Assembly: GCF_006345805.1 (NCBI RefSeq)
Contig: NC_043009.1
Span: 17,236,001-17,300,000 of the forward strand
Direction: 5' to 3'
Length of the DNA: 64,000 nucleotides
From: Octopus sinensis
Taxonomy: Eukaryota
The notes beneath the pieces are model-generated. The model did not search any database. It saw only the letters and a list, made by a program, of their open reading frames with translations, and had not been told where the DNA came from. The position numbers were made by a program, and so were the translations under genes. This document shows, one piece after another, positions 10,547 through 57,600 of this stretch (within the stretch, counting starts at the first letter, position 1; every line of letters starts with the position of its first letter).

Positions 10547-10672
10547 CTATACATGAGAATCTGTCATAGGAGAGTTTCATACCAGCAGAGCTACATATAC
10601 ATTCATAAGAGCCTTCCAGATTGATGCAGGTTTCTCCACAAGTGCTGTTATCAAGCAAACATTCATCTACAT
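10547..10672 (-). CDS. cbEGF exon: DVDECLLDNSTCGETCINLEGSYECICSSAGMKLSYDRFSCI
   Basis: 126 bp; acceptor gtcttttctag|AT, donor ATAG|gtatgt; lies within ORF 10539-10724. Confidence 0.95.
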
Positions 10673-11450: not shown

Positions 11451-11645
11451 GGACAACAGCAAAGAGTGAGGCAGCTTTATGTTAAGTGATGAAAAGTCAC
11501 AGTCCAAAGAGAGAGACACAAGAGGTTTCTTGCTGGAGAAGAGATGCATGGTTACTAACATTATGGAAGAGAAGGTGGGAGTAATTGGTGAAGAACTAGA
11601 ACAAGAAATAAAGATGATAGCGATGAGGTTTCAGGGTGGACAGAA

Positions 11646-13170
11646 TATGCTGATGATTTTGCTCTAATAGCTGAGTCACTATCAGAACTAGAGGAGATGT
11701 TTCAGGTGTGGAAGCAAGGTCTAGAATCGAAGGGTCTTAGAGTCAATCTAGCAAAAACCAAAATCCTAGTAAGTTGGAAGGCAGACAAACCACAAATCCC
11801 TTCAGGTAGATGGCCCTGCTTGATCTGTAGAAAAGGTGTAGGTAGAAACTCCATAAGATGTACCCAGTGTAAACTGTGGACACAAGAGATGCAGCAATAT
11901 CAAAGGAAGACTAACTGGGAAGATAGTTTTTGTGTGTGGCAAATGCTCAGGGGCAATAAACACTGAAAATGTGCAGAAAACAGCTTCTGTTACATTCCAA
12001 GGGGGAAATGTACAAGTAGTTGATAGCTTCTGTTACCTAGGTAACCAAGACAGTAGCGGGGGAGGTTGCTCTGAGAGTGTAGCTGTTAGAATAAGAATAG
12101 CCTGAGCAAAGTTCAGGGAGCTCCTACCTCTGCTGGTGACAAAAGGCCTCTCACTCAGAGTAAAAGATAAACTGTATGAGGCATGTGTGCGAACAGCCAT
12201 GCTACATGGCAGTGAAACATGGACCATGACTGCTGAGGACATGCGTAAGCTTGCAAGGAATGGAGCTAATATGCTCCACTGGATGTGTAATGTCAGTGTA
12301 CATACATGACAGAGTATAAGTGCCCTGAAAGAAAAGTTGGACATAAGAAGCATCAGATGTGGTGTGCAAGAGAGACAACTGCACTGTTGCATATGGATGA
12401 CGACAGCTGTGTGAAAAAGTGTCATACTCTAGCAGTAGAGAGAACCTGTGGAAGAGGTAGACCCAGGAAAACCTGGGATGAGATGTTGAAGCACGACCTT
12501 TGAATATTGAGCTTCAGTGAGGCGATGACAAGTCACCGAGACCTTTGGAGATATGCTATGCTTGAGAAGACCTAGCAAAGCAAGTGAGACCATAACTGTG
12601 GCCTAGCCAGTGCAGCATAACCAGCCCATTTAAGAGTACCCTTCAATTATTGGGCAATAAACTGCACCTGCAAAGACCTGTTGAGGCAAGTGAAGTCGTT
12701 ATCATGGCACCATTCGAGTGTGGTCGATGCCAGTGCCACCTGACTTGTCCAGTGCTGGTGGCATGTAAAAATCCCCATTCGGGTGTGGTCGATGCCTGTG
12801 CCAGCCGACAGGTCCTGTGCTGGCTGACAGGTCCTGTGCCGGTGGTATGTAAAAAGCACCAATCAAGCATGTTCATTGCCAATGCTGCCTTACTAGCTCC
12901 TGTGCCAGTGGCACATAAAAAGCACCATTCAAGCGTGGCCAATGCCAGTACTGCCTGACTGGCCCTCATGCCGGTAACATGTAAAAAGTACCCACTTATC
13001 TCTTGGAGTGGTTGGCATTAGGAAGGGCATCCAGCTGTAGAAACATTGCTAGATTGGATTGGAGTCTGGTGCAGCCTCCTGGCTCACCAGCCCTTGGTCA
13101 ACCCATCCAACCCATGCCAGCACGGAAAGCAGACGTTAAACGAAGATGATGATGATGATGATGATGACGA
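11646..13170 (+). mobile_element. 5'-truncated RTE-clade LINE (RT C-terminal half, modular 3' UTR, (GAT)n tail)
   Basis: YADDFALIAESLSELEEMFQVWKQGLESKGLRVNLAKTK...FCYLG...LHGSETW..., with stops and frameshifts. Confidence 0.9.
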
Positions 13171-26138: not shown

Positions 26139-28325
26139 CTGTTGTGTCTGGGGAGAGTCATTCTCTATTAGTACCTTGTAATTTAACACACACACCGGTA
26201 AAATTTTCATTTATTTCTATTTTAGTTTTCTAAAATTTTTGTTGCATCTTGCAAACTTTTCAATAGTTTTGACTCTGTCCGTTATTCACACTGCATTCTT
26301 TTTTGTTTGTTTGTGCGCATATGTGTGGGTTACTGTATATGTGTGCATACACATGTATGTATGTATGTATGTATGTATGTATGTATGTATGTATGTATGT
26401 ATGTATGTATGTATGTATGTATGAATGTATGTATGTATGTATGTATGTATGTATGAATGTATGTATGTATGTATGTATGTATGTATGTATGTATGTATGT
26501 ATGTATGTTTGTATGTATGTATGTATGTATGTATGAATGTATGTATGTATGTATGTATGTATGTATGAATGTATGTATGTATGTATGTATGTATGTATGT
26601 ATGTATGTTTGTATGTATGTATGTATGTATGTATGAATGTATGTATGTATGTATGTATGTATGTATGAATGTATGTATGTATGTATGTATGTATGTATGT
26701 ATGTATGTATGTGTATGTATGTATGTATGAATGTATGTATGTATGTATGTATGTATGTATGAATGTATGTATGTATGTATGTATGTATGTATGTATGTAT
26801 GTATGTTTGTATGTATGTATGTATGTATGTATGAATGTATGTATGTATGTATGTATGTATGTATGTTGTATGTATGTATGTATGTATGTATGTATGTATG
26901 TATGTTTGTATGTGTGTATGTATGTTTGTATGTGTGTGTATGAATGTATGTATGTATGTATGTATGTATGTATGTATGTATGTATGTATGTTTGTATGTA
27001 TGTATGTATGTATGTATGTATGTTTGTATGTATGTATGTATGTATGTATGTATGTATGTATGTATGTATGAATGTATGTATGTATGTATGTATGTATGTA
27101 TGTATGTATGTATGTATGTATGTATGTTTGTATGTATGTATGTATGTATGTATGTATGTATGTATGTATGTATGTATGTATGTATGTTTGTATGTGTGTA
27201 TGTATGTTTGTATGTGTGTGTATGAATGTATGTGTGTGTATGTGCATATGTATATATGTATGTATGTGTGTGCGTTTGTATGTATGAATTCTGCATATTC
27301 ATGTGTTTGCGTGTCCATGTTTGTATGTTCTTATGTGTGAGTGCGTGTGTGTGTATGTTTAGTCGTACTGACTATATGAACATTTGAGACAATATGACAA
27401 CAAAAAATAGTCCTCCATACTTTACCAACATGCCAAGAACTAACATGGAGGCAACCTGGGTCAACCTGACATCCGCATCTTATCCATGCACCCAAAGGAC
27501 CCAACACTCAGACAAATACAGGAGTACGTCCTCATAGATGAAACTTCCCCAATGCTAAATAGGAAATATACATAGTAGATATCATATCCCCATACCCACA
27601 GTTTACACAGGTAGAATAGAATAACTAGTGGGCTGTTATGTAGATAGATGTGTGTATGTGTGTGTGTGTGGGGGTGTATGTATATATATATATGTATATG
27701 CGCATGTGTCTAAGCATATGGATATGAAAGTAAACAGATCAACATACAGATGGATAGGTACATAGGTTATAAGAACAGACAAGCACACATACACACACAT
27801 ACACAAATGAAGACTGTAACACAGGACCATATATACACACACACTTTACTTCATGCATGGACACATATGGAGACACATGTCCACACATATGGAGATACAC
27901 AGCCATACATACAAACACAGTACATAGTTACAAAACACACACACACACACACACACACACTCAGACATGCACACACAAGGAGCCTGAGGTACCCACACAC
28001 ATATGCAAATACACATACACGCACATACATAAAAACACACAAACACAGACACGCAAACCCATACATATGCAGAATACATACATACAAATGCACACACATA
28101 CATACATATATACATAAGCACACACACATACATGCTTACTCACACATGCATATATACATACATACATGTATGCAAGTGTATGCACACACACACATACACA
28201 CACACTAAGCCACATATATGCGCATAAACAAATAAAAAGAAACGCAGTGAGAATAACGGACAGAGTCAAAACTATTGGAAAGATTGCAAGATGCAACAAA
28301 AACTTTCGAAAAATAAAAAGAAATA
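26139..28325. mobile_element. Fold-back-like element: microsatellite-rich arm, core, inverted arm
   Basis: 26139-27360 is matched in inverted orientation by 27700-28325; a second partial copy lies at 38411-39300. Confidence 0.65.
26353..27240. repeat. (TATG)n microsatellite expansion, ~890 bp
   Basis: Tetranucleotide array with TTTG/AATG interruptions; source of the spurious YIHT/MYVC ORFs. Confidence 0.97.
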
Positions 28326-37270: not shown

Positions 37271-38167
37271 AAACCTCCTCATCGAAACAAAACTCCGGAA
37301 GTAAACCAAAACTTTCAGATAGGGACTGTTGGAATCTTACACAAATTGTTAGAAAGGATCACAAAAGTACAGCTCCCAAAATTACTGCCGAGCTTAATGA
37401 CCACTTCAAGAACCCAGTGTCCACAAAAACGGTTCAGTGGGAGCTGCACAAAGCCGGATTTCACAGGAAGGCTGCAATCAGAAAACCACCACTTTCAAAA
37501 TCAAACATTGCAAAGTGTTTAGAGTGGAGTAAAAACCTACAGAATTGGTCCCTAGAGCAGTGGAGAATGTTATTTATTCAGACAAGTCATTCTTTACCTA
37601 ATTTCTGACCACCGGTCAAGTATACAACCAAAAGTATACAGTGTGGAGACAGCCAAAAGAAGCATTTAACCCAGACTGCCTTCTTTCAACTGTTAAACAT
37701 GGAGGAGGATCTGTGATGATCAGGGAGGCTGTATCTTGGAAATCTGCCAGTTGAATGGTTTCCCTTCTTAGCAGAATTAATGGTGAAGACTATTTAAGCA
37801 TTTTATCTGATCAAATTCATTCTATGATTGCACAACTGTTTACAGAGGGAAACACAATCTTTCAGGCGATAATGCACCAATTCACACAGTTAAATTTGTT
37901 ACTGAATGGCACGAGGCACATTCTAGTGAAATTGAACATCTTATCAGGCCACCACAGTCCCCAAATCTCGATATTATTAAACATTTATGGTGCATTTTAG
38001 AAAAACAAGTAAGGAGCCAATATCCTCCACCATCATCACTACAAGAACTGGAGACTGTTTTAACTGAAGAATGGACAAAGATTCACTTGGAAAAAATTCA
38101 AACTTTGTATGAGTCCATACTTCATAGAATTCAAACTGTAATTACTGCCAAGGGCAGTCCTACCCTG
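37271..38167 (+). mobile_element. Decayed Tc1-like (DD34E) transposase
   Basis: KITAELNDHF...KKP.LS..NIAKCLEW...TVKHGGGSVMI...FQ.DNAPIH...PPQSP.L..I..LW; 5'-truncated at a TA microsatellite. Confidence 0.88.
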
Positions 38168-38410
38168 TATATATATATATATATATATTTAAAAGTAGAA
38201 AGATTAGCCAAAACTTTTTGACTGCTATTTCTAAATTCGGTGTGTGGTGAGGCAAATCGTTGCTGAACCCTAATTAATTAGTATTACTTAAACCTTCCTT
38301 GAATGGGACTTTTACATGCCGAACTCTACTTGGTGAAATTGATAGTTATTTCTAAATTAATTAATTTCACCCTTTATTATTATTGATATATATATATATA
38401 TATATATATA

Positions 38411-46006: not shown

Positions 46007-47618
46007 ACACCTACACACAGCATACACTATGTACCATTTTCTATATGATTAAAATAATATAACCCTACATCACCTTGTACCCTAAACTACACCCTGTCTG
46101 AAGAGGAACGCAGTAAATCTCAATTTTATAATTTTCATTTATTTAATTGATTAACGAAGCTCGCATGAATATCATGTCAAATATAATACTGTATCTAATG
46201 AGCAGGCCTTGGACATGTTTCATAATGGCTAGCATACCATTTTAACGAGGGGAGTCTAGCTGATCGTATAGGTCTGTCTGTGCATCGGCAAGCAAAATGG
46301 AAGTATATACTGCAGTTGTTGGCAGTGTTGATAAGAATCTACTGCACCAAAACAAGTGTCTAGTATTGATCTCAATGTTGGATGAGTATAATGTGTTTGT
46401 GTATGTGTGTTTGTGTTCATGTGTAATGTGTTTGAGTATGCCTTGCATGTGTGTGCGTGTGTGTGTGAAGTAGTCAGTTTTCAGCTGAGTTGTTACAATG
46501 GCACTGAAATTTTATGGTCTGTCTAGACCTAGGCTTCTCCTTCTGCTACTTTATTTTCCTTTCAGTCTCCTCCCCCTCCTCTTCCTCTTCCCTCCTATCT
46601 TCTGTTTCTTTTTGTTGATGTGATGAGAAACCACTTGCTTAAGATGTGTGGTGTGCAGGAAGTGGTGTGGTGAGGGTGGTGGCGGTTGAAGTAAGATGGT
46701 GTGAATGATGTTCTCCTGATGGCAGCGGCAATGGTATGGAAAGAAAGCTGAAGAGGGGGAAAAACTGATAGGAAGGGAAGAAGGAAGAAAGTGGGGGAGG
46801 AAAGGTAGATTAAGGAAAAGAGTGAATGGAAAGAAAGGTAGAGAAAAGGAAGAAGAAATCAAAGAAAATTAGCAATAAAGAAATATGGAATGAAGAAAAG
46901 AGGAAAACAGAAAAAAATATTCTTCAGTTTTCCATTAGTTTCTCATTGCCACCAGCAGCAATACCAGCAGCAGCAGTTGACCCTGTCAATGAAATTTACA
47001 AGGAATCTCTGTCAAAAATAATATTTAGGGGTTTTGATGAATTTTGGATGGTTTTTATATATTTTGGGGGAGAATAGACTAGAAAATAGATTTGATGAAA
47101 GAAGAGAAGCAGAGAACAAAATGTGATACACTTGTAAATAATAATTTATATACACAGATGTCCAGTGTTCAAATACTAATTAATGTAATTATTATTAACA
47201 ATTATTAATTTAACAAACACAAGATATATTTAGTTTTTTAAACTAATATAATGACTATAATTAGAACAGAGTTTCCCAATTATTTTGATACTGTGGAAAA
47301 GTTTCAGATAGACAAAACGCCCAAGAAAATTAATTTATCAAGGTCTGAATAGTTCATTGAAATCACACAATTTCAGAAATGCTCAAAGCTGTTGTTTTTA
47401 TTACCCTTAAGAATGAATGTTTCATTGTCAGTGTTGAAACCCACAATGTCATCTGCCAAAACAGAAGTATGGAGATCAGTATGAACCAGTAATATACTGC
47501 AATCAAATGAATCAACTGTATTCCATGTTTATTTTACATTAACAGAACAAAAAATGGTGATGAGGTATGACTTTATGAAAGAAACTTTATAGACGGGATA
47601 ATAAAAAATATTAATTAC

Positions 47619-47738
47619 CTGTACAGTTCTTCATGTCTGGTGCCAATTCGAAACCAACTGCACAAGCACAGTAGGCGCTGCCATTGGTGTTCACACAGTC
47701 ATATTCACAACCAAAGCCATCAGCACACTCATCGATGT
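47619..47738 (-). CDS. cbEGF exon: [40 protein letters not shown]
   Basis: 120 bp; acceptor cctgttttgtag|AC, donor ACAG|gtaatt; six cysteines. Not in the ORF track. Confidence 0.95.
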
Positions 47739-53499: not shown

Positions 53500-53657
53500 G
53501 CAGAGTTAGTGAAAACAGTGCAGGTACATCTGCTAATTAGTGGAAACAATGCATATACATCCACTAATTAGTAACAATAGTGCATATACATTCACTAATT
53601 AATGAAAACAGTGTATCCATCCACTAATCAGTAAAAACTGTGTACACATCTATTAAT
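53500..53657. repeat. Degenerate ~31-bp minisatellite, about 5 units
   Basis: Repeats of approximately gtgcatatacatccactaattagtaaaaaca. Confidence 0.8.
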
Positions 53658-53713: not shown

Positions 53714-53830
53714 CATCACCTTTACGACCACTTAGATGAGGAGTGTCTAAAAGGAAGTTGGATGATGACGATACAGGTTTTGGCAGTCTCCTTCTCCAAC
53801 CTATTGGCATATTGCGCCAGTTTTGAACAA
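53714..53830 (-). CDS. Candidate non-EGF cassette/linker exon: VVQNWRNMPIGWRRRLPKPVSSSSNFLLDTPHLSGRKGD
   Basis: 117 bp, phase 1-1, open in the frame of the flanking EGF exons; long U-rich AG-free tract ending tctgaag|; donor GATG|gtacgt. Confidence 0.55.
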
Positions 53831-54477
53831 CTTCAGACAAAACAATGAACGAAGAGAAAAATAAAACAATGAAACAATAAAAAGAAAAAACTCAAAACAA
53901 TAATAAAAAAAAATTTTGAAATCAAAAATAAACTTCAAATAAATTAAACTTGTCATTTGCATGTTTAGAAATGTTTTCGTTTTGTAGTGAAAAAGGCTTA
54001 TGACACAATTTAAGGTAACAGAAAGTTCAGTTATGACAGAATAGCTACATCAACCCCAGTTGGGGTCTTTAACAGCTATTATGTAGCTGAAATCTAAAAT
54101 TTTTTTTTTTTATCTCTAATGGAATATTAAATACAGAGACAGTATGAAACTGAGCATAAAAATCTCACTAAACCTAGTTTAGTTCCAGAAAGCAAAGTCT
54201 GATGTGTATGATCTGATACAGTGACACATAACAAACTTTGTGCTACCTATGTTGTTCTGTATTCTGAAATTAAAGCTTCAATTCAACTCATTATTAATAT
54301 CTTTCTTTATTTTATAATTTAAATATTTTAGTTTTGGAATTGTACAGTAATTTCAGATTACTTAAATGTGTTAATTAAGAAGAAAAAAATCATGTAAAAT
54401 GTAGTATTTCCTCTCATCAATGAAATCATAGGCTAAAAAACAAAACAATAAAAAACATGAAGAAGACAAAAATTTAC

Positions 54478-54606
54478 CTAGACAAGTTTTGTTATCTTCA
54501 TTAGACAGTATAAAGCCTGGTCTGTGACATTCACAATAGTATGAACCATCTACATTCTCACAGATCTGTTGACAATCACCATTTCTTGAAGCACATTCAT
54601 CAATGT
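54478..54606 (-). CDS. cbEGF exon: [43 protein letters not shown]
   Basis: 129 bp; acceptor ttccctttgtgcag|AC, donor CTAG|gtaaat; six cysteines; C-x-N-x4-Y-x-C-x-C consensus. Not in the ORF track. Confidence 0.95.
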
Positions 54607-57600
54607 CTGCACAAAGGGAAAAGAATAATTCAGAAAAAAATGTTAGTTTAATATTGACAGAATTGTGTAATAAAATGATGTGGTTGGAGAAGAAATGAGA
54701 GAAAGAGGAAATGTGATGTGAACACGTAAGACAACATGAGATGAAGTTTGTGATTGATGCTGCTTATGTCATGAAAAGTATGTCTTGGTGTATAGAGCAG
54801 TGTAATGTTGATTTCTTGAAGAGATACATTATATCTTTGCACAAACAATGACAGAACAAGAGCAATTGATCTTGGGCCAAATAGAACTATGAAGGGTCTT
54901 GGAATTTACAGTGTCTTGTAAACATACAGCTGCCTATTTCTCTGTTATGTCCATACAGAGCTAATCAAGAGTATGCAACACTATTATCTTCTAAATCCAT
55001 CTTATCAATAATAACACCAATAATTATAATAAGTTGCTTGGACTAGTGTCACTACCAATACTTTGTTTTAAGTTGATAAGTATAATTCCATGTTCAGAGT
55101 GGAAGACAACAAGTTAAAGTATAATGGTGTTTCCCCGTTGTTTTACTATACGATAAATTAAGGTATATCAAAAATTTGCATTTTCTAATGTCACCTTCTT
55201 ATCTATGAATGTCTTTCTAGTGTAGTATCATCAGTTTGTCACATTCTACTCAAACTATAACAAACTTATTCTTTACGAATACTCCAGCGATGGTGGTGGT
55301 GGTGGTGGTGGTGCAGGCTGTCACACTGCACCCTATATACGTTATCATGCACTACATACAGGAATGTGTGGTATTCACCATCAACTAGGCAGAGACATGG
55401 TGTAGCAGGCAAAATAGATTTGTGGGTCAGCTTGGTCATTTAGCTGGCTGCCTACATGCTGTAGGACTGAACTAAGCTGGGGCTATGGAATAACAACAAC
55501 TCCAACTGTACTCTACCCACTCAAACCTTTCAGTTGCATCCTTACATTGTCACCCACTCAGTGTTTCTTGCTTTCAAGCACAATGACAAATCTTATGAGG
55601 AAAGTACATCCTGGGGATCTGCTTGCTGTTCAATGGAACAACTTTCCTTTTGGCTGTGTCTTTTCAAACTCACTAAAGCGTATAGAACCCTAAATAATTT
55701 TACTTAATTAATACAATATCTGAGTGGTAGAGCTCTTCTTGTCAATTAATACACTTACCTCCTTTCCTTCTCTCCCAGACATATCTGAATAGAAATATTT
55801 TAAAATCACATGCCACCCTTTAGCTGAAATCTCAAGATGTATGTCAGCTCATACGTAACATTTTTACCCTCCACCCCACTTTTTTTGATCTACTGTGTGA
55901 CTAAAACACCTTTCAAAATGTACTGACACTAAAACCCAGACACACACACATACACACACCCCTATATAAAATACATTAGAAAGACATGTTTCCAAATCTT
56001 TACAGAGTAAAAAAAAAAGCAAGAAATATCTAAAAATTAGGAATGATGAATGAGTTGAAAAAATTCAATACGAAATGTATGAATGATGTAAATTATATAT
56101 GTGTGAGGTGTGGGTGTATGCTTGCAATACACTCTGAATTGGCAAAAGATGTTGAAGATGTGTACAAGTTCACACACACACACACACACACACACATATG
56201 TGCATGAGTGTGTTCATGTATGTGTGTGAGTGCACTTGTGCGTGTGTGTGTGTGTGTGTGCGTGTGTGTACATGTGTGTGTGCATGTGTGTGCGTGCGTG
56301 TATGTGTGTGTGTGTATGTGTGTTGATGTATGTGCTTGAATTAATTGTCTTATACATATAAAGCATATATGCTGATATAAATTTTCAAATTCTTTTATAA
56401 ATTCAAAATGTATTGCACTCAGATTATATGCATCTACATATTTTAGATGTGAGTATATATCTATAACTGTCTGCCTGCCTGATTGTATGTATGTATATAT
56501 GTCAGTCAGTCTGTGTGTGTGTATGTATGCTGGTATGTATGTAAGCATGTATTTATGTGTCTTTGTACCTATGTATGTATACAGGTATGAATGCGAAGCA
56601 GCTTTTTGTTTAGATATATCAAACTGAAAAATGTCTTTATGCAGTTCTTTACATATTTTTATTTTAATTTTTCCTAATTTCCAATGAATTTTTCTCTTCT
56701 TAATGGAGATTTTATGTGAATTTTTCAAGGGCTAATTTATTTATGATTGAAGGTCATGTGATCCTATCATGTGAACCTATCATGTGATCCTGTCATTAAG
56801 GTCTATAGTATAACTGCTGACTACGATATTCTGCTTTTAATGTAACCATGAGTCTTGTAATATATGCACAAGGAAATCTCTATTTAGACTGACACAACAC
56901 ATTCCTGTAGGTTAATTAACCACCTGAAACAAGGAGGCATGGCAATATATTGCTTTATAAAAGCCATAATATATAATATTGGTTAGTAATTTGGAACTAT
57001 TGATAGTTTTTTTCTCCTTAGGTAAAAATATGTCCATCAAAACATCAATTGTGATTACCATTTATCTGAATATGTTATCAGAGATTTTCCCCATATCACC
57101 AGATTTTTAAAACTAAATGACACTTACTAAAACATACTTTCAACAAAAGTTTTTTTAAAATTTAGTTTTCATGCATAATTTGTTTTTTATGTATATTTCA
57201 TTGATCCCAACAAACATTGAAACACAATGACCATCTGTGTGCATTGATGCTGCAACTATTTTCATGCATATTTACAGGGCTTGTTACATTTCAAACACCA
57301 CATACAGTAAGAACACAAACTAATTAATACTCCACTGGCTTTCATATATTTCATTAGCATAATATCTCAGCAATAACATTGACCTTATTTATCTTATGTA
57401 TCACTACTGGTAAAAAAAAAAAAAAGAAAAAAAAAGGAAAAAAAACAAAGAGAACACTGTTGCTCTCTGCATTTTTTATGGTGAAAGTAGCAAGGAAGTG
57501 TTTGTAATTTGATACAGAATAAATATCTCAAGGGACAGTGCTTGTAAAGTAGCAGTTTTCTGTTTTATTTGACAATATTTACAACTTTTCCTGATATGAA

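What the first reader, a model, noticed from the sequence alone, without database searches (positions are those of the whole stretch)
53714..53830. Candidate in-frame non-EGF cassette exon inside a cbEGF array
Seen: a 117-bp segment 647 bp downstream of the first EGF exon. It has a ~55-nt AG-free U-rich acceptor tract and donor ATG|GTACGT, the same 1-1 phase as all EGF exons, no stops, and several retained CpGs in a CpG-poor background. It encodes a Cys-free basic, Ser/Pro-rich 39-aa linker (WRRRLPKP...SGRKGD). Established: tandem cbEGF modules form rigid Ca-stabilised rods, and symmetric exons can be included or skipped without frameshift. Inference: inclusion would put a flexible hinge with dibasic (possibly proteolytic) sites and a KGD tripeptide into the rod, giving a splice-switchable hinged or cleavable isoform.
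Basis: partly seen in the sequence, partly recalled or inferred. Interest (0 to 1): 0.7.

Follow-up and report, generated by a model that had tools for sequence, protein, structure and literature searches.

The report
Real linker exon between two EGF modules
The 117-base segment is very probably a genuine coding exon that puts a 39-residue cysteine-free spacer between two calcium-binding EGF modules. A protein on record from a close relative contains it, joined at exactly the predicted splice sites, but nothing here shows it is switched in and out, so it is an ordinary feature.

Summary
On the minus strand, 53830..53714 is a 117-nt, stop-free, phase 1-1 segment. It has a 58-nt AG-free U-rich acceptor tract and the donor ATG|GTACGT, and it encodes VVQNWRNMPIGWRRRLPKPVSSSSNFLLDTPHLSGRKGD.

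These signals alone are not above chance. A crude splice and open-frame scan finds about 5-7 equally good pseudo-exons per strand of the window.

The deciding evidence is one public protein, P0001 (UniParc UPI0006954532, 142 aa, 96% identical overall). It reads EGF exon A, then this 39-aa segment (36/39 identical, all three changes conservative), then EGF exon B, then an 18-aa tail and a stop. All three junctions fall on GT-AG sites in the window. The linker alone matches P0001 at E = 2e-17 against 1.84 billion proteins and has no other convincing relative.

So the exon call is supported. The cassette idea (skipping) and the hinge, cleavage and KGD ideas are untested:
- No skipped product was found.
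- No furin-type R-X-K/R-R site is present.

The recorded product ends 18 aa after EGF B, so the exon lies between the last two EGFs of that isoform, not deep inside a long rod.

Verdict: an ordinary, lineage-restricted inter-EGF linker exon of low interest.

The parts
54478..54606 (-). cbEGF exon A (129 nt, phase 1-1), [43 protein letters not shown]. Acceptor gtgcAG|AC, donor CTAG|GTAAAT.
   Evidence: Pfam EGF_CA matches at E 8.9e-14 over two stretches. tblastn of P0001 residues 1-45 is 93% identical. An ACTAAC branch-point-like motif lies 36-41 nt upstream.
53833..53890 (-). 58-nt AG-free, U-rich tract ahead of the acceptor AG (53832-53831). It is largely made of a 24-nt tandem repeat (53839-53913, 3.2 copies).
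53714..53830 (-). The candidate: a 117-nt phase 1-1 exon encoding the 39-aa Cys-free basic Ser/Pro-rich linker VVQNWRNMPIGWRRRLPKPVSSSSNFLLDTPHLSGRKGD. The purine-rich run GGAGAAGGAGA (53797-53787) encodes RRR.
   Evidence: P0001 residues 46-84 are 36/39 identical. The linker alone against 1.84e9 proteins finds P0001 at 76.7 bits, E 2e-17. No Pfam family matches. No repeat copy exists elsewhere in the window.
47619..47738 (-). cbEGF exon B (120 nt, phase 1-1), [40 protein letters not shown]. Acceptor ttgtAG|AC, donor ACAG|GTAATT.
   Evidence: P0001 residues 85-125 differ from it by one substitution, D to E. Pfam EGF_CA matches.
46924..46982 (-). Tail exon (G)STAAAGIAAGGNEKLMEN followed by the stop TGA (46926-46924). 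It closes the reading frame of the P0001-type product 18 aa after EGF B.
   Evidence: P0001 residues 124-142 match it with one in-frame Ala deletion.

Best explanation
The segment is a genuine protein-coding exon of a secreted protein built from cbEGF repeats. The host is an invertebrate, possibly a cephalopod, but that was not verified. The gene's 5' part lies outside the window.

The exon is spliced between two cbEGF exons at ordinary GT-AG sites. It adds a 39-residue, cysteine-free, net-basic, Ser/Pro-rich stretch that belongs to no known domain family.

Without the exon, the two modules would meet in the canonical one-residue junction C-L-D-I-D-E-C that packs cbEGF pairs into a rigid unit. 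With it they are separated, so the last EGF of this product is most likely tethered rather than rod-like. That step is inferred.

Shown:
- The sequence features.
- A database protein from a close relative that contains the exon at exactly these junctions and terminates in a short tail exon.

Inferred:
- That this record reflects a real mRNA.
- That the linker is unstructured.
- That it uncouples the two modules.

Whether the exon is constitutive or sometimes skipped is open.
For: 1. P0001 (UniParc UPI0006954532) aligns to four separate minus-strand pieces of the window, in order: 54613-54479, 53831-53715, 47739-47614 and 46986-46927. Splicing the window at the GT-AG sites reproduces it at 96% identity and ends at the same stop.
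2. The linker alone retrieves P0001 at E 2e-17 from 1.84 billion proteins.
3. All three linker substitutions are conservative (L>I, T>S, S>T). Only 27-30% of possible single-base non-synonymous changes in this exon score above 0 in BLOSUM62, so three out of three has p of about 0.02. There is no frameshift or stop.
4. P0001 begins 2 residues (CT) before exon A, with no Met. That is an arbitrary start, typical of a record built on a partial transcript and not expected from an ab initio exon (inference).
5. CpG observed/expected is 0.54 in the exon, like exon B (0.47), against 0.10-0.19 in the flanking introns. No 117-nt stretch of the local introns reaches 3 CpGs.
6. The flanking exons are bona fide cbEGF.
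Against: - Only one independent sequence supports the exon. Its DNA, organism and origin (transcript or gene model) could not be retrieved.
- The two species are close, 96% identical at the protein level, so a neutral pseudo-exon could also survive intact.
- The linker carries 3/39 changes against 3/84 in the two EGFs, which means looser constraint at best.
- Splice signals and open frame are not better than chance alternatives, and the acceptor is weak (A at -3).
- The AlphaFold model was too poor overall (mean pLDDT 36; even the EGFs are below 50) to say anything about disorder.
Confidence: 0.72

Rival explanations
1. The exon is a regulated cassette, and both forms are made. Inclusion turns a rigid cbEGF pair into a hinged, protease-cleavable or integrin-binding (KGD) isoform.
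For: - Phase 1-1 symmetry. Skipping would recreate a perfect cbEGF-cbEGF junction...KTCL|DIDEC.
- The acceptor is weak, with A at -3 and a 58-nt AG-exclusion zone, so the branch point must be distant. Both are features enriched in alternative exons (the enrichment is from general knowledge).
- A purine-rich GGAGAAGGAGA run inside the exon could act as a splicing enhancer (inference).
- The exon has no relatives beyond one close species. Young exons are often alternative (general knowledge).
- There is precedent: an LTBP splice variant that lacks the proteinase-sensitive hinge (Michel et al. 1998, cited in PMC5039643).
Against: - No skipped product was found. would have listed short proteins joining A to B, and only P0001 came back.
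- There is no canonical furin motif.
- KGD is no better conserved than the rest of the peptide.
- In the recorded product the exon sits before the last EGF, 60 residues from the C-terminus, so there is no long rod to hinge.
Confidence: 0.15
2. This is not a real exon. It is an intronic open segment with passable splice sites that a gene predictor placed in the relative's model, and it looks conserved only because the two genomes are very close.
For: - About 5-7 equally good phase 1-1 pseudo-exons occur per strand of this window.
- There is another exon-like 48-nt segment (47452-47405) that P0001 does not use.
- P0001 is a singleton with no contig on record.
- Neither the 1.84-billion-protein library nor the 89-aa junction query found any other protein with the linker. 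The 20-copy query also returned nothing, but it failed its own positive control.
Against: - P0001's start 2 residues upstream of exon A, and its short stop-bearing tail exon, look transcript-derived.
- The three substitutions are all conservative (p about 0.02).
- CpG retention is locally unique.
- The linker is about as well conserved as the EGF exons, not clearly worse.
Confidence: 0.13

Closest known systems
Hinge and linker regions of LTBP-1, including the splice variant that lacks the proteinase-sensitive hinge
   Same: It is a non-domain, basic or Pro-containing stretch that interrupts an array of cbEGF modules. NMR shows the LTBP1 C-terminal interdomain regions behave as flexible linkers (PMC3906135). 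A splice variant missing the protease-sensitive hinge is on record (reference b22 in PMC5039643).
   Different: - No sequence similarity.
- No TB (8-Cys) domains are visible here.
- Neither alternative splicing nor protease sensitivity is shown for this exon.
- This linker is only 39 aa.
The 'unique region' of vertebrate fibrillins (Pro-rich in fibrillin-1, Gly-rich in fibrillin-2)
   Same: It is a Cys-free, low-complexity stretch within a cbEGF-rich protein. It has been proposed as a hinge, and it is restricted to one lineage (PMC3306419).
   Different: - The fibrillin region follows a TB domain, and the same paper reports it absent from mollusc fibrillins.
- The composition differs: this one is basic and Ser-rich, not dominated by Pro or Gly.
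- There is no evidence that this gene is a fibrillin.
Fibulin, EFEMP and SCUBE-type cbEGF proteins (best non-self database matches)
   Same: They have tandem cbEGF modules with the D-x-D/N-E-C start and are 34-45% identical over the EGF parts.
   Different: - The similarity is confined to generic EGF modules.
- None of them has the linker.
- The fibulin C-terminal domain (PF22914) is not seen. The recorded product ends in an 18-aa tail instead.
Octovafibrin (the Octopus bimaculoides egg-tether protein)
   Same: It is a cephalopod protein made of tandem EGF modules (PMC10336842).
   Different: - Octovafibrin has 29 EGFs that PROSITE does not class as calcium-binding, capped by C-type lectin domains.
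- Here the EGFs are calcium-binding type and the C-terminus is a short tail. It is not the same protein.

Membership tests
Calcium-binding EGF module (Pfam EGF_CA, PF07645), for the two flanking exons | Profile match above the curated cut-off, six Cys, and a D-x-D/N-E-C start | tested here: met
   EGF_CA scores 51.9 bits against a cut-off of 27, over two stretches. FXa_inhibition and cEGF also pass. DIDEC starts both exons.
EGF or any other known domain, for the 39-aa segment itself | A match to any Pfam family | tested here: not met
   0 families at E up to 10, and the peptide has no Cys.
Protein-coding exon | Present in a spliced product at GT-AG boundaries | tested here: met
   P0001 contains it between exons A and B at the predicted junctions. 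Caveat: the origin of the record, transcript or gene model, is unknown.
Cassette (alternatively spliced) exon | Symmetric phase, so that skipping keeps the frame | tested here: met
   Phase 1-1. The skipped product reads ...KTCLDIDEC... through to the same stop.
Cassette (alternatively spliced) exon | Both included and skipped mRNAs exist | not testable with these tools
   - Only the included form was found.
- No RNA-seq data are on hand.
- Proteins much longer than the query did not appear in any search list, so long skipped models cannot be excluded.
Proprotein-convertase (furin-type) cleavage site | R-X-K/R-R immediately before the scissile bond | tested here: not met
   The sequence reads I-G-W-R-R-R-L-P and S-G-R-K-G-D. 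No Arg sits at P4 in either case, so these are plain dibasic pairs.
KGD integrin-recognition motif of the disintegrin type | KGD displayed on a disulfide-constrained loop | tested here: not met
   KGD is present and conserved in P0001, but it lies in a Cys-free stretch one residue before EGF B. Binding itself cannot be tested here.
LTBP/fibrillin family | TB (8-Cys) domains alongside cbEGF | tested here: inconclusive
   tblastn and Pfam detect no TB domain in the exons visible in the window. However, the 5' part of the gene lies outside the window.
LysM-like repeat (a lead from P0121) | A significant profile or pairwise match | tested here: not met
   Pfam finds nothing for the linker and no LysM in P0121. 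The pairwise hits are about 30 bits per stretch, which is far from significant at database scale. The phmmer E of 1e-6 sums four near-identical repeats.

The most novel reading that the evidence does not exclude
The exon is a young, lineage-restricted cassette. Its regulated inclusion would convert a rigid terminal cbEGF pair into a tethered one and expose dibasic and KGD sites, giving a splice-controlled cleavable or adhesive isoform of an invertebrate matrix protein. Inclusion might be driven by the purine-rich element inside the exon and the tandem ACUAAU-bearing intronic repeat just downstream.
Probability: 0.1. Interest if true: 0.45.

Novelty: new member of a known kind. Interest (0 to 1): 0.2.

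Why it matters
If the exon is real, it adds one more case of a non-domain spacer encoded by its own symmetric exon inside an EGF-repeat gene. This one is apparently confined to a narrow lineage. It is useful for correct annotation of this gene, and it is a small example of how exon insertion can break a canonical cbEGF-cbEGF interface. It does not open a long-standing question. Splice-variable, protease-sensitive hinges in EGF-array proteins are already known from LTBPs, and Cys-free hinge regions from fibrillins.

Tried and rejected
1. Metagenome and metatranscriptome contig scan for the DNA behind P0001, wanted for dN/dS. It returned only three unrelated EGF loci. The exact look-up of P0001 found nothing on record.

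2. A 780-aa query made of 20 copies of the linker, meant to reach long annotated proteins. No hit came back, but the positive control P0001 was not recovered either. In one search every listed hit was no longer than 1.75 times the query. So I treat as uninformative rather than as a negative result.

3. An 89-aa junction query to catch short transcript fragments with or without the exon. It returned only P0001.

4. A structure prediction of A-linker-B-tail from a 2-row alignment. Mean pLDDT was 36, so it is unusable for or against disorder.

5. The idea that the exon is an exonised repeat. No other copy exists in the window. The only self-hit is a T-rich tract upstream of EGF exon D, which is low-complexity similarity.

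6. LysM-like origin of the N-terminal half. Not supported.

7. Identity with octovafibrin. Rejected on domain type and termini.

8. Plus-strand features under the exon and Rfam families. None found.

9. Literature search for the peptide strings. No hits.

10. Species identification.

Full report
**Observation**

The gene runs on the minus strand. The candidate occupies 53830..53714 (117 nt).
- Its acceptor is ttttgtctgaAG|TTGTTC and its donor is GGTGATG|GTACGT.
- It lies 647 nt downstream of cbEGF exon A (54606..54478) and 5975 nt upstream of cbEGF exon B (47738..47619).
- In phase 1 it reads VVQNWRNMPIGWRRRLPKPVSSSSNFLLDTPHLSGRKGD without a stop. The other two frames have stops.
- The tract upstream of the acceptor is AG-free for 58 nt, 69% T. 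It is largely a 24-nt tandem repeat.
- The peptide has no Cys, 7 K/R against 2 D/E, 5 Ser and 4 Pro.
- The exon holds three CpGs, observed/expected 0.54. The flanking introns give 0.10-0.19.

**Is it more than chance?**

On these signals alone, no. I scored splice sites with a crude consensus matrix whose frequencies I took from memory, so the scores are rough.
- The acceptor scores about 0 because of A at -3 and T at +1. The EGF exons score 2.6-8.5.
- The donor scores 3.2, within the EGF range of about -1.0 to 3.8.
- Five other non-EGF, open, phase 1-1 AG...GT segments of at least 90 nt do as well or better on the minus strand. Seven do so on the control plus strand.
- A further exon-like 48-nt segment with good sites lies at 47452-47405.
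- The CpG signal is locally unique: 0 of 6910 windows of 117 nt in the three local introns reach 3 CpGs. It is common in the window at large, at 13% of such windows.

**The decisive evidence**

A protein search returned one near relative, P0001 (142 aa; UniParc UPI0006954532; a singleton cluster with no contig on record). By tblastn it maps to four ordered minus-strand pieces of the window:
- Exon A, 93% identical.
- The candidate, 36 of 39 identical.
- Exon B, 95% identical.
- A fourth piece at 46986-46927.

Splicing the window at the GT-AG sites gives a 141-aa product that is 96% identical to P0001. It ends at the same place, at a TGA stop at 46926-46924.

The linker alone, searched against 1.84 billion representative proteins, finds P0001 at 76.7 bits (E 2e-17). 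It finds nothing else credible. The other four hits are repeat proteins whose scores add up several near-identical weak matches.

**How strong is that evidence?**

P0001's DNA and source could not be retrieved, so I cannot prove that it comes from a transcript.

Three points favour a real mRNA and coding constraint:
- It starts arbitrarily, two residues (CT) before exon A and without a Met. It also uses a short stop-bearing tail exon. That looks like a partial-transcript-based record (inference).
- The three linker differences (L>I, T>S, S>T) are all conservative. Given that only 27-30% of possible non-synonymous single-base changes in this exon are conservative, three of three has p of about 0.02.
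- There is no indel or stop in the linker. The CpGs are kept as in exon B.

Two points weigh against over-reading it:
- The two species are close, 96% identical at the protein level.
- The linker has 3/39 changes against 3/84 in the EGFs, and it rests on a single sequence.

I put the probability that this is a genuine exon at roughly 0.85.

**What it does**

- The flanking exons are calcium-binding EGF modules (Pfam EGF_CA, 51.9 bits). The linker belongs to no family.
- If the exon is skipped, A and B meet as C-L-D-I-D-E-C. That is the canonical one-residue junction through which tandem cbEGFs pack into a stiff unit (established knowledge of fibrillin and Notch cbEGF pairs).
- If it is included, 39 Cys-free residues separate them. 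EGF B is then most likely tethered and its N-terminal Ca2+ site loses the packing partner (inference).
- The structure prediction was too poor to test disorder, with a mean pLDDT of 36.

- The recorded product stops 18 aa after EGF B, in the tail exon 46982-46924. In that isoform the exon sits between the last two EGFs, not within a long rod.
- The other three EGF exons start at 10672, 8851 and 4990. They lie about 36 kb further on and may belong to a different isoform or a neighbouring paralogue.
- The 'proteolytic' sites are plain dibasic pairs with no R-X-K/R-R motif.
- KGD is conserved, but so is nearly everything else.
- No skipped form was found. The databases here hold essentially nothing else from this gene, so that absence says little.
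- Several features are compatible with regulated splicing but do not show it: the weak acceptor, the long AG-exclusion zone, the symmetric phase, the purine-rich GGAGAAGGAGA inside the exon, and a 31-nt tandem repeat with ACUAAU motifs 72-208 nt downstream.

**Comparison with known systems**

- The closest analogues are the hinge and linker regions of LTBP-1. NMR shows flexible linkers between its C-terminal modules (PMC3906135), and a splice variant lacking the proteinase-sensitive hinge has been described (cited in PMC5039643).
- The Pro- or Gly-rich 'unique region' of vertebrate fibrillins is another analogue. The same paper reports it absent from mollusc fibrillins (PMC3306419).
- There is no sequence relationship to either, and no TB domains are visible here.
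- It is not octovafibrin, whose EGFs are non-calcium-binding and which ends in C-type lectin domains (PMC10336842).

**Verdict**

This is a real, lineage-restricted linker exon in a cbEGF gene. The exon call is supported, while the cassette and hinge function is untested. It is a new member of a known kind and of low interest.

Noticed in passing
window 46924-46982 (minus strand): A short exon encodes (G)STAAAGIAAGGNEKLMEN followed by a TGA stop. It is used by P0001 directly after EGF exon B. It may be an alternative last exon, and it raises the question of whether EGF exons C-E (10672, 8851, 4990) belong to the same transcript or to a neighbouring gene.
   Followed up: partly
window 47405-47452 (minus strand): A 48-nt open, phase 1-1, exon-like segment (DDIVGFNTDNETFILK) lies in the intron between exon B and the tail exon. 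It has a good acceptor (ttctgttttggcAG) and donor (AAGG|GTAATA). P0001 does not contain it, so it is either a second candidate micro-cassette or a chance pseudo-exon.
   Followed up: partly
window 53506-53642: A 31-nt tandem repeat of 4.5 copies lies in the intron 72-208 nt downstream of the candidate's donor. In pre-mRNA sense the copies carry ACUAAU, ACUAAC or AUUAAU motifs, which resemble STAR-protein sites or branch points. Three ACTAAY matches fall within 70 nt on the minus strand, against about 35 in the whole 64 kb strand.
   Followed up: partly
window 53839-53913: The U-rich acceptor tract of the candidate exon is itself a 24-nt tandem repeat (3.2 copies). The polypyrimidine tract may therefore have arisen by local duplication.
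   Followed up: no
window 53800-53801 (minus strand): An in-frame alternative acceptor, caatAG|G, lies 30 nt inside the exon. Using it would drop VVQNWRNMPI and keep the frame. P0001 uses the upstream site, and the internal site has no pyrimidine tract.
   Followed up: no
window 53787-53797 (minus strand): The tribasic RRR is encoded by AGA AGG AGA within the purine run GGAGAAGGAGA. That run resembles a purine-rich exonic splicing enhancer placed about 35 nt from a weak acceptor.
   Followed up: no
P0121 (database protein), residues 464-486, 530-552, 599-625 and 667-682: A 728-aa repeat protein carries the motif V[QK]DW[HR]N[VL]P[DN]GYRLR[IV]P. This resembles the linker's VQNWRNMPIGWRRRLP. Each match is only about 30 bits and is not significant at database scale, and Pfam finds no domain there.
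   Followed up: partly
window 37811-38218 (+) and 11592-11963 (+): Two transposon relics lie in the large gap between EGF exons B and C: a DDE_3 (Tc1/mariner-type) transposase fragment at E 2.8e-8, and a reverse-transcriptase fragment at E 5.3e-7.
   Followed up: partly
window about 26260-27370, 56100-56600, and scattered at 25.3-25.9k, 40.2k, 43.4-44.1k and 44.8-45.7k: There are long microsatellite-like arrays (TG/TA-rich, with a strong GC skew at 26-28 kb). A recurring short element, which translates as ...NPLT.LW....S.K.LPKVP..G..., sits next to several of them and is probably a SINE-like repeat family.
   Followed up: no
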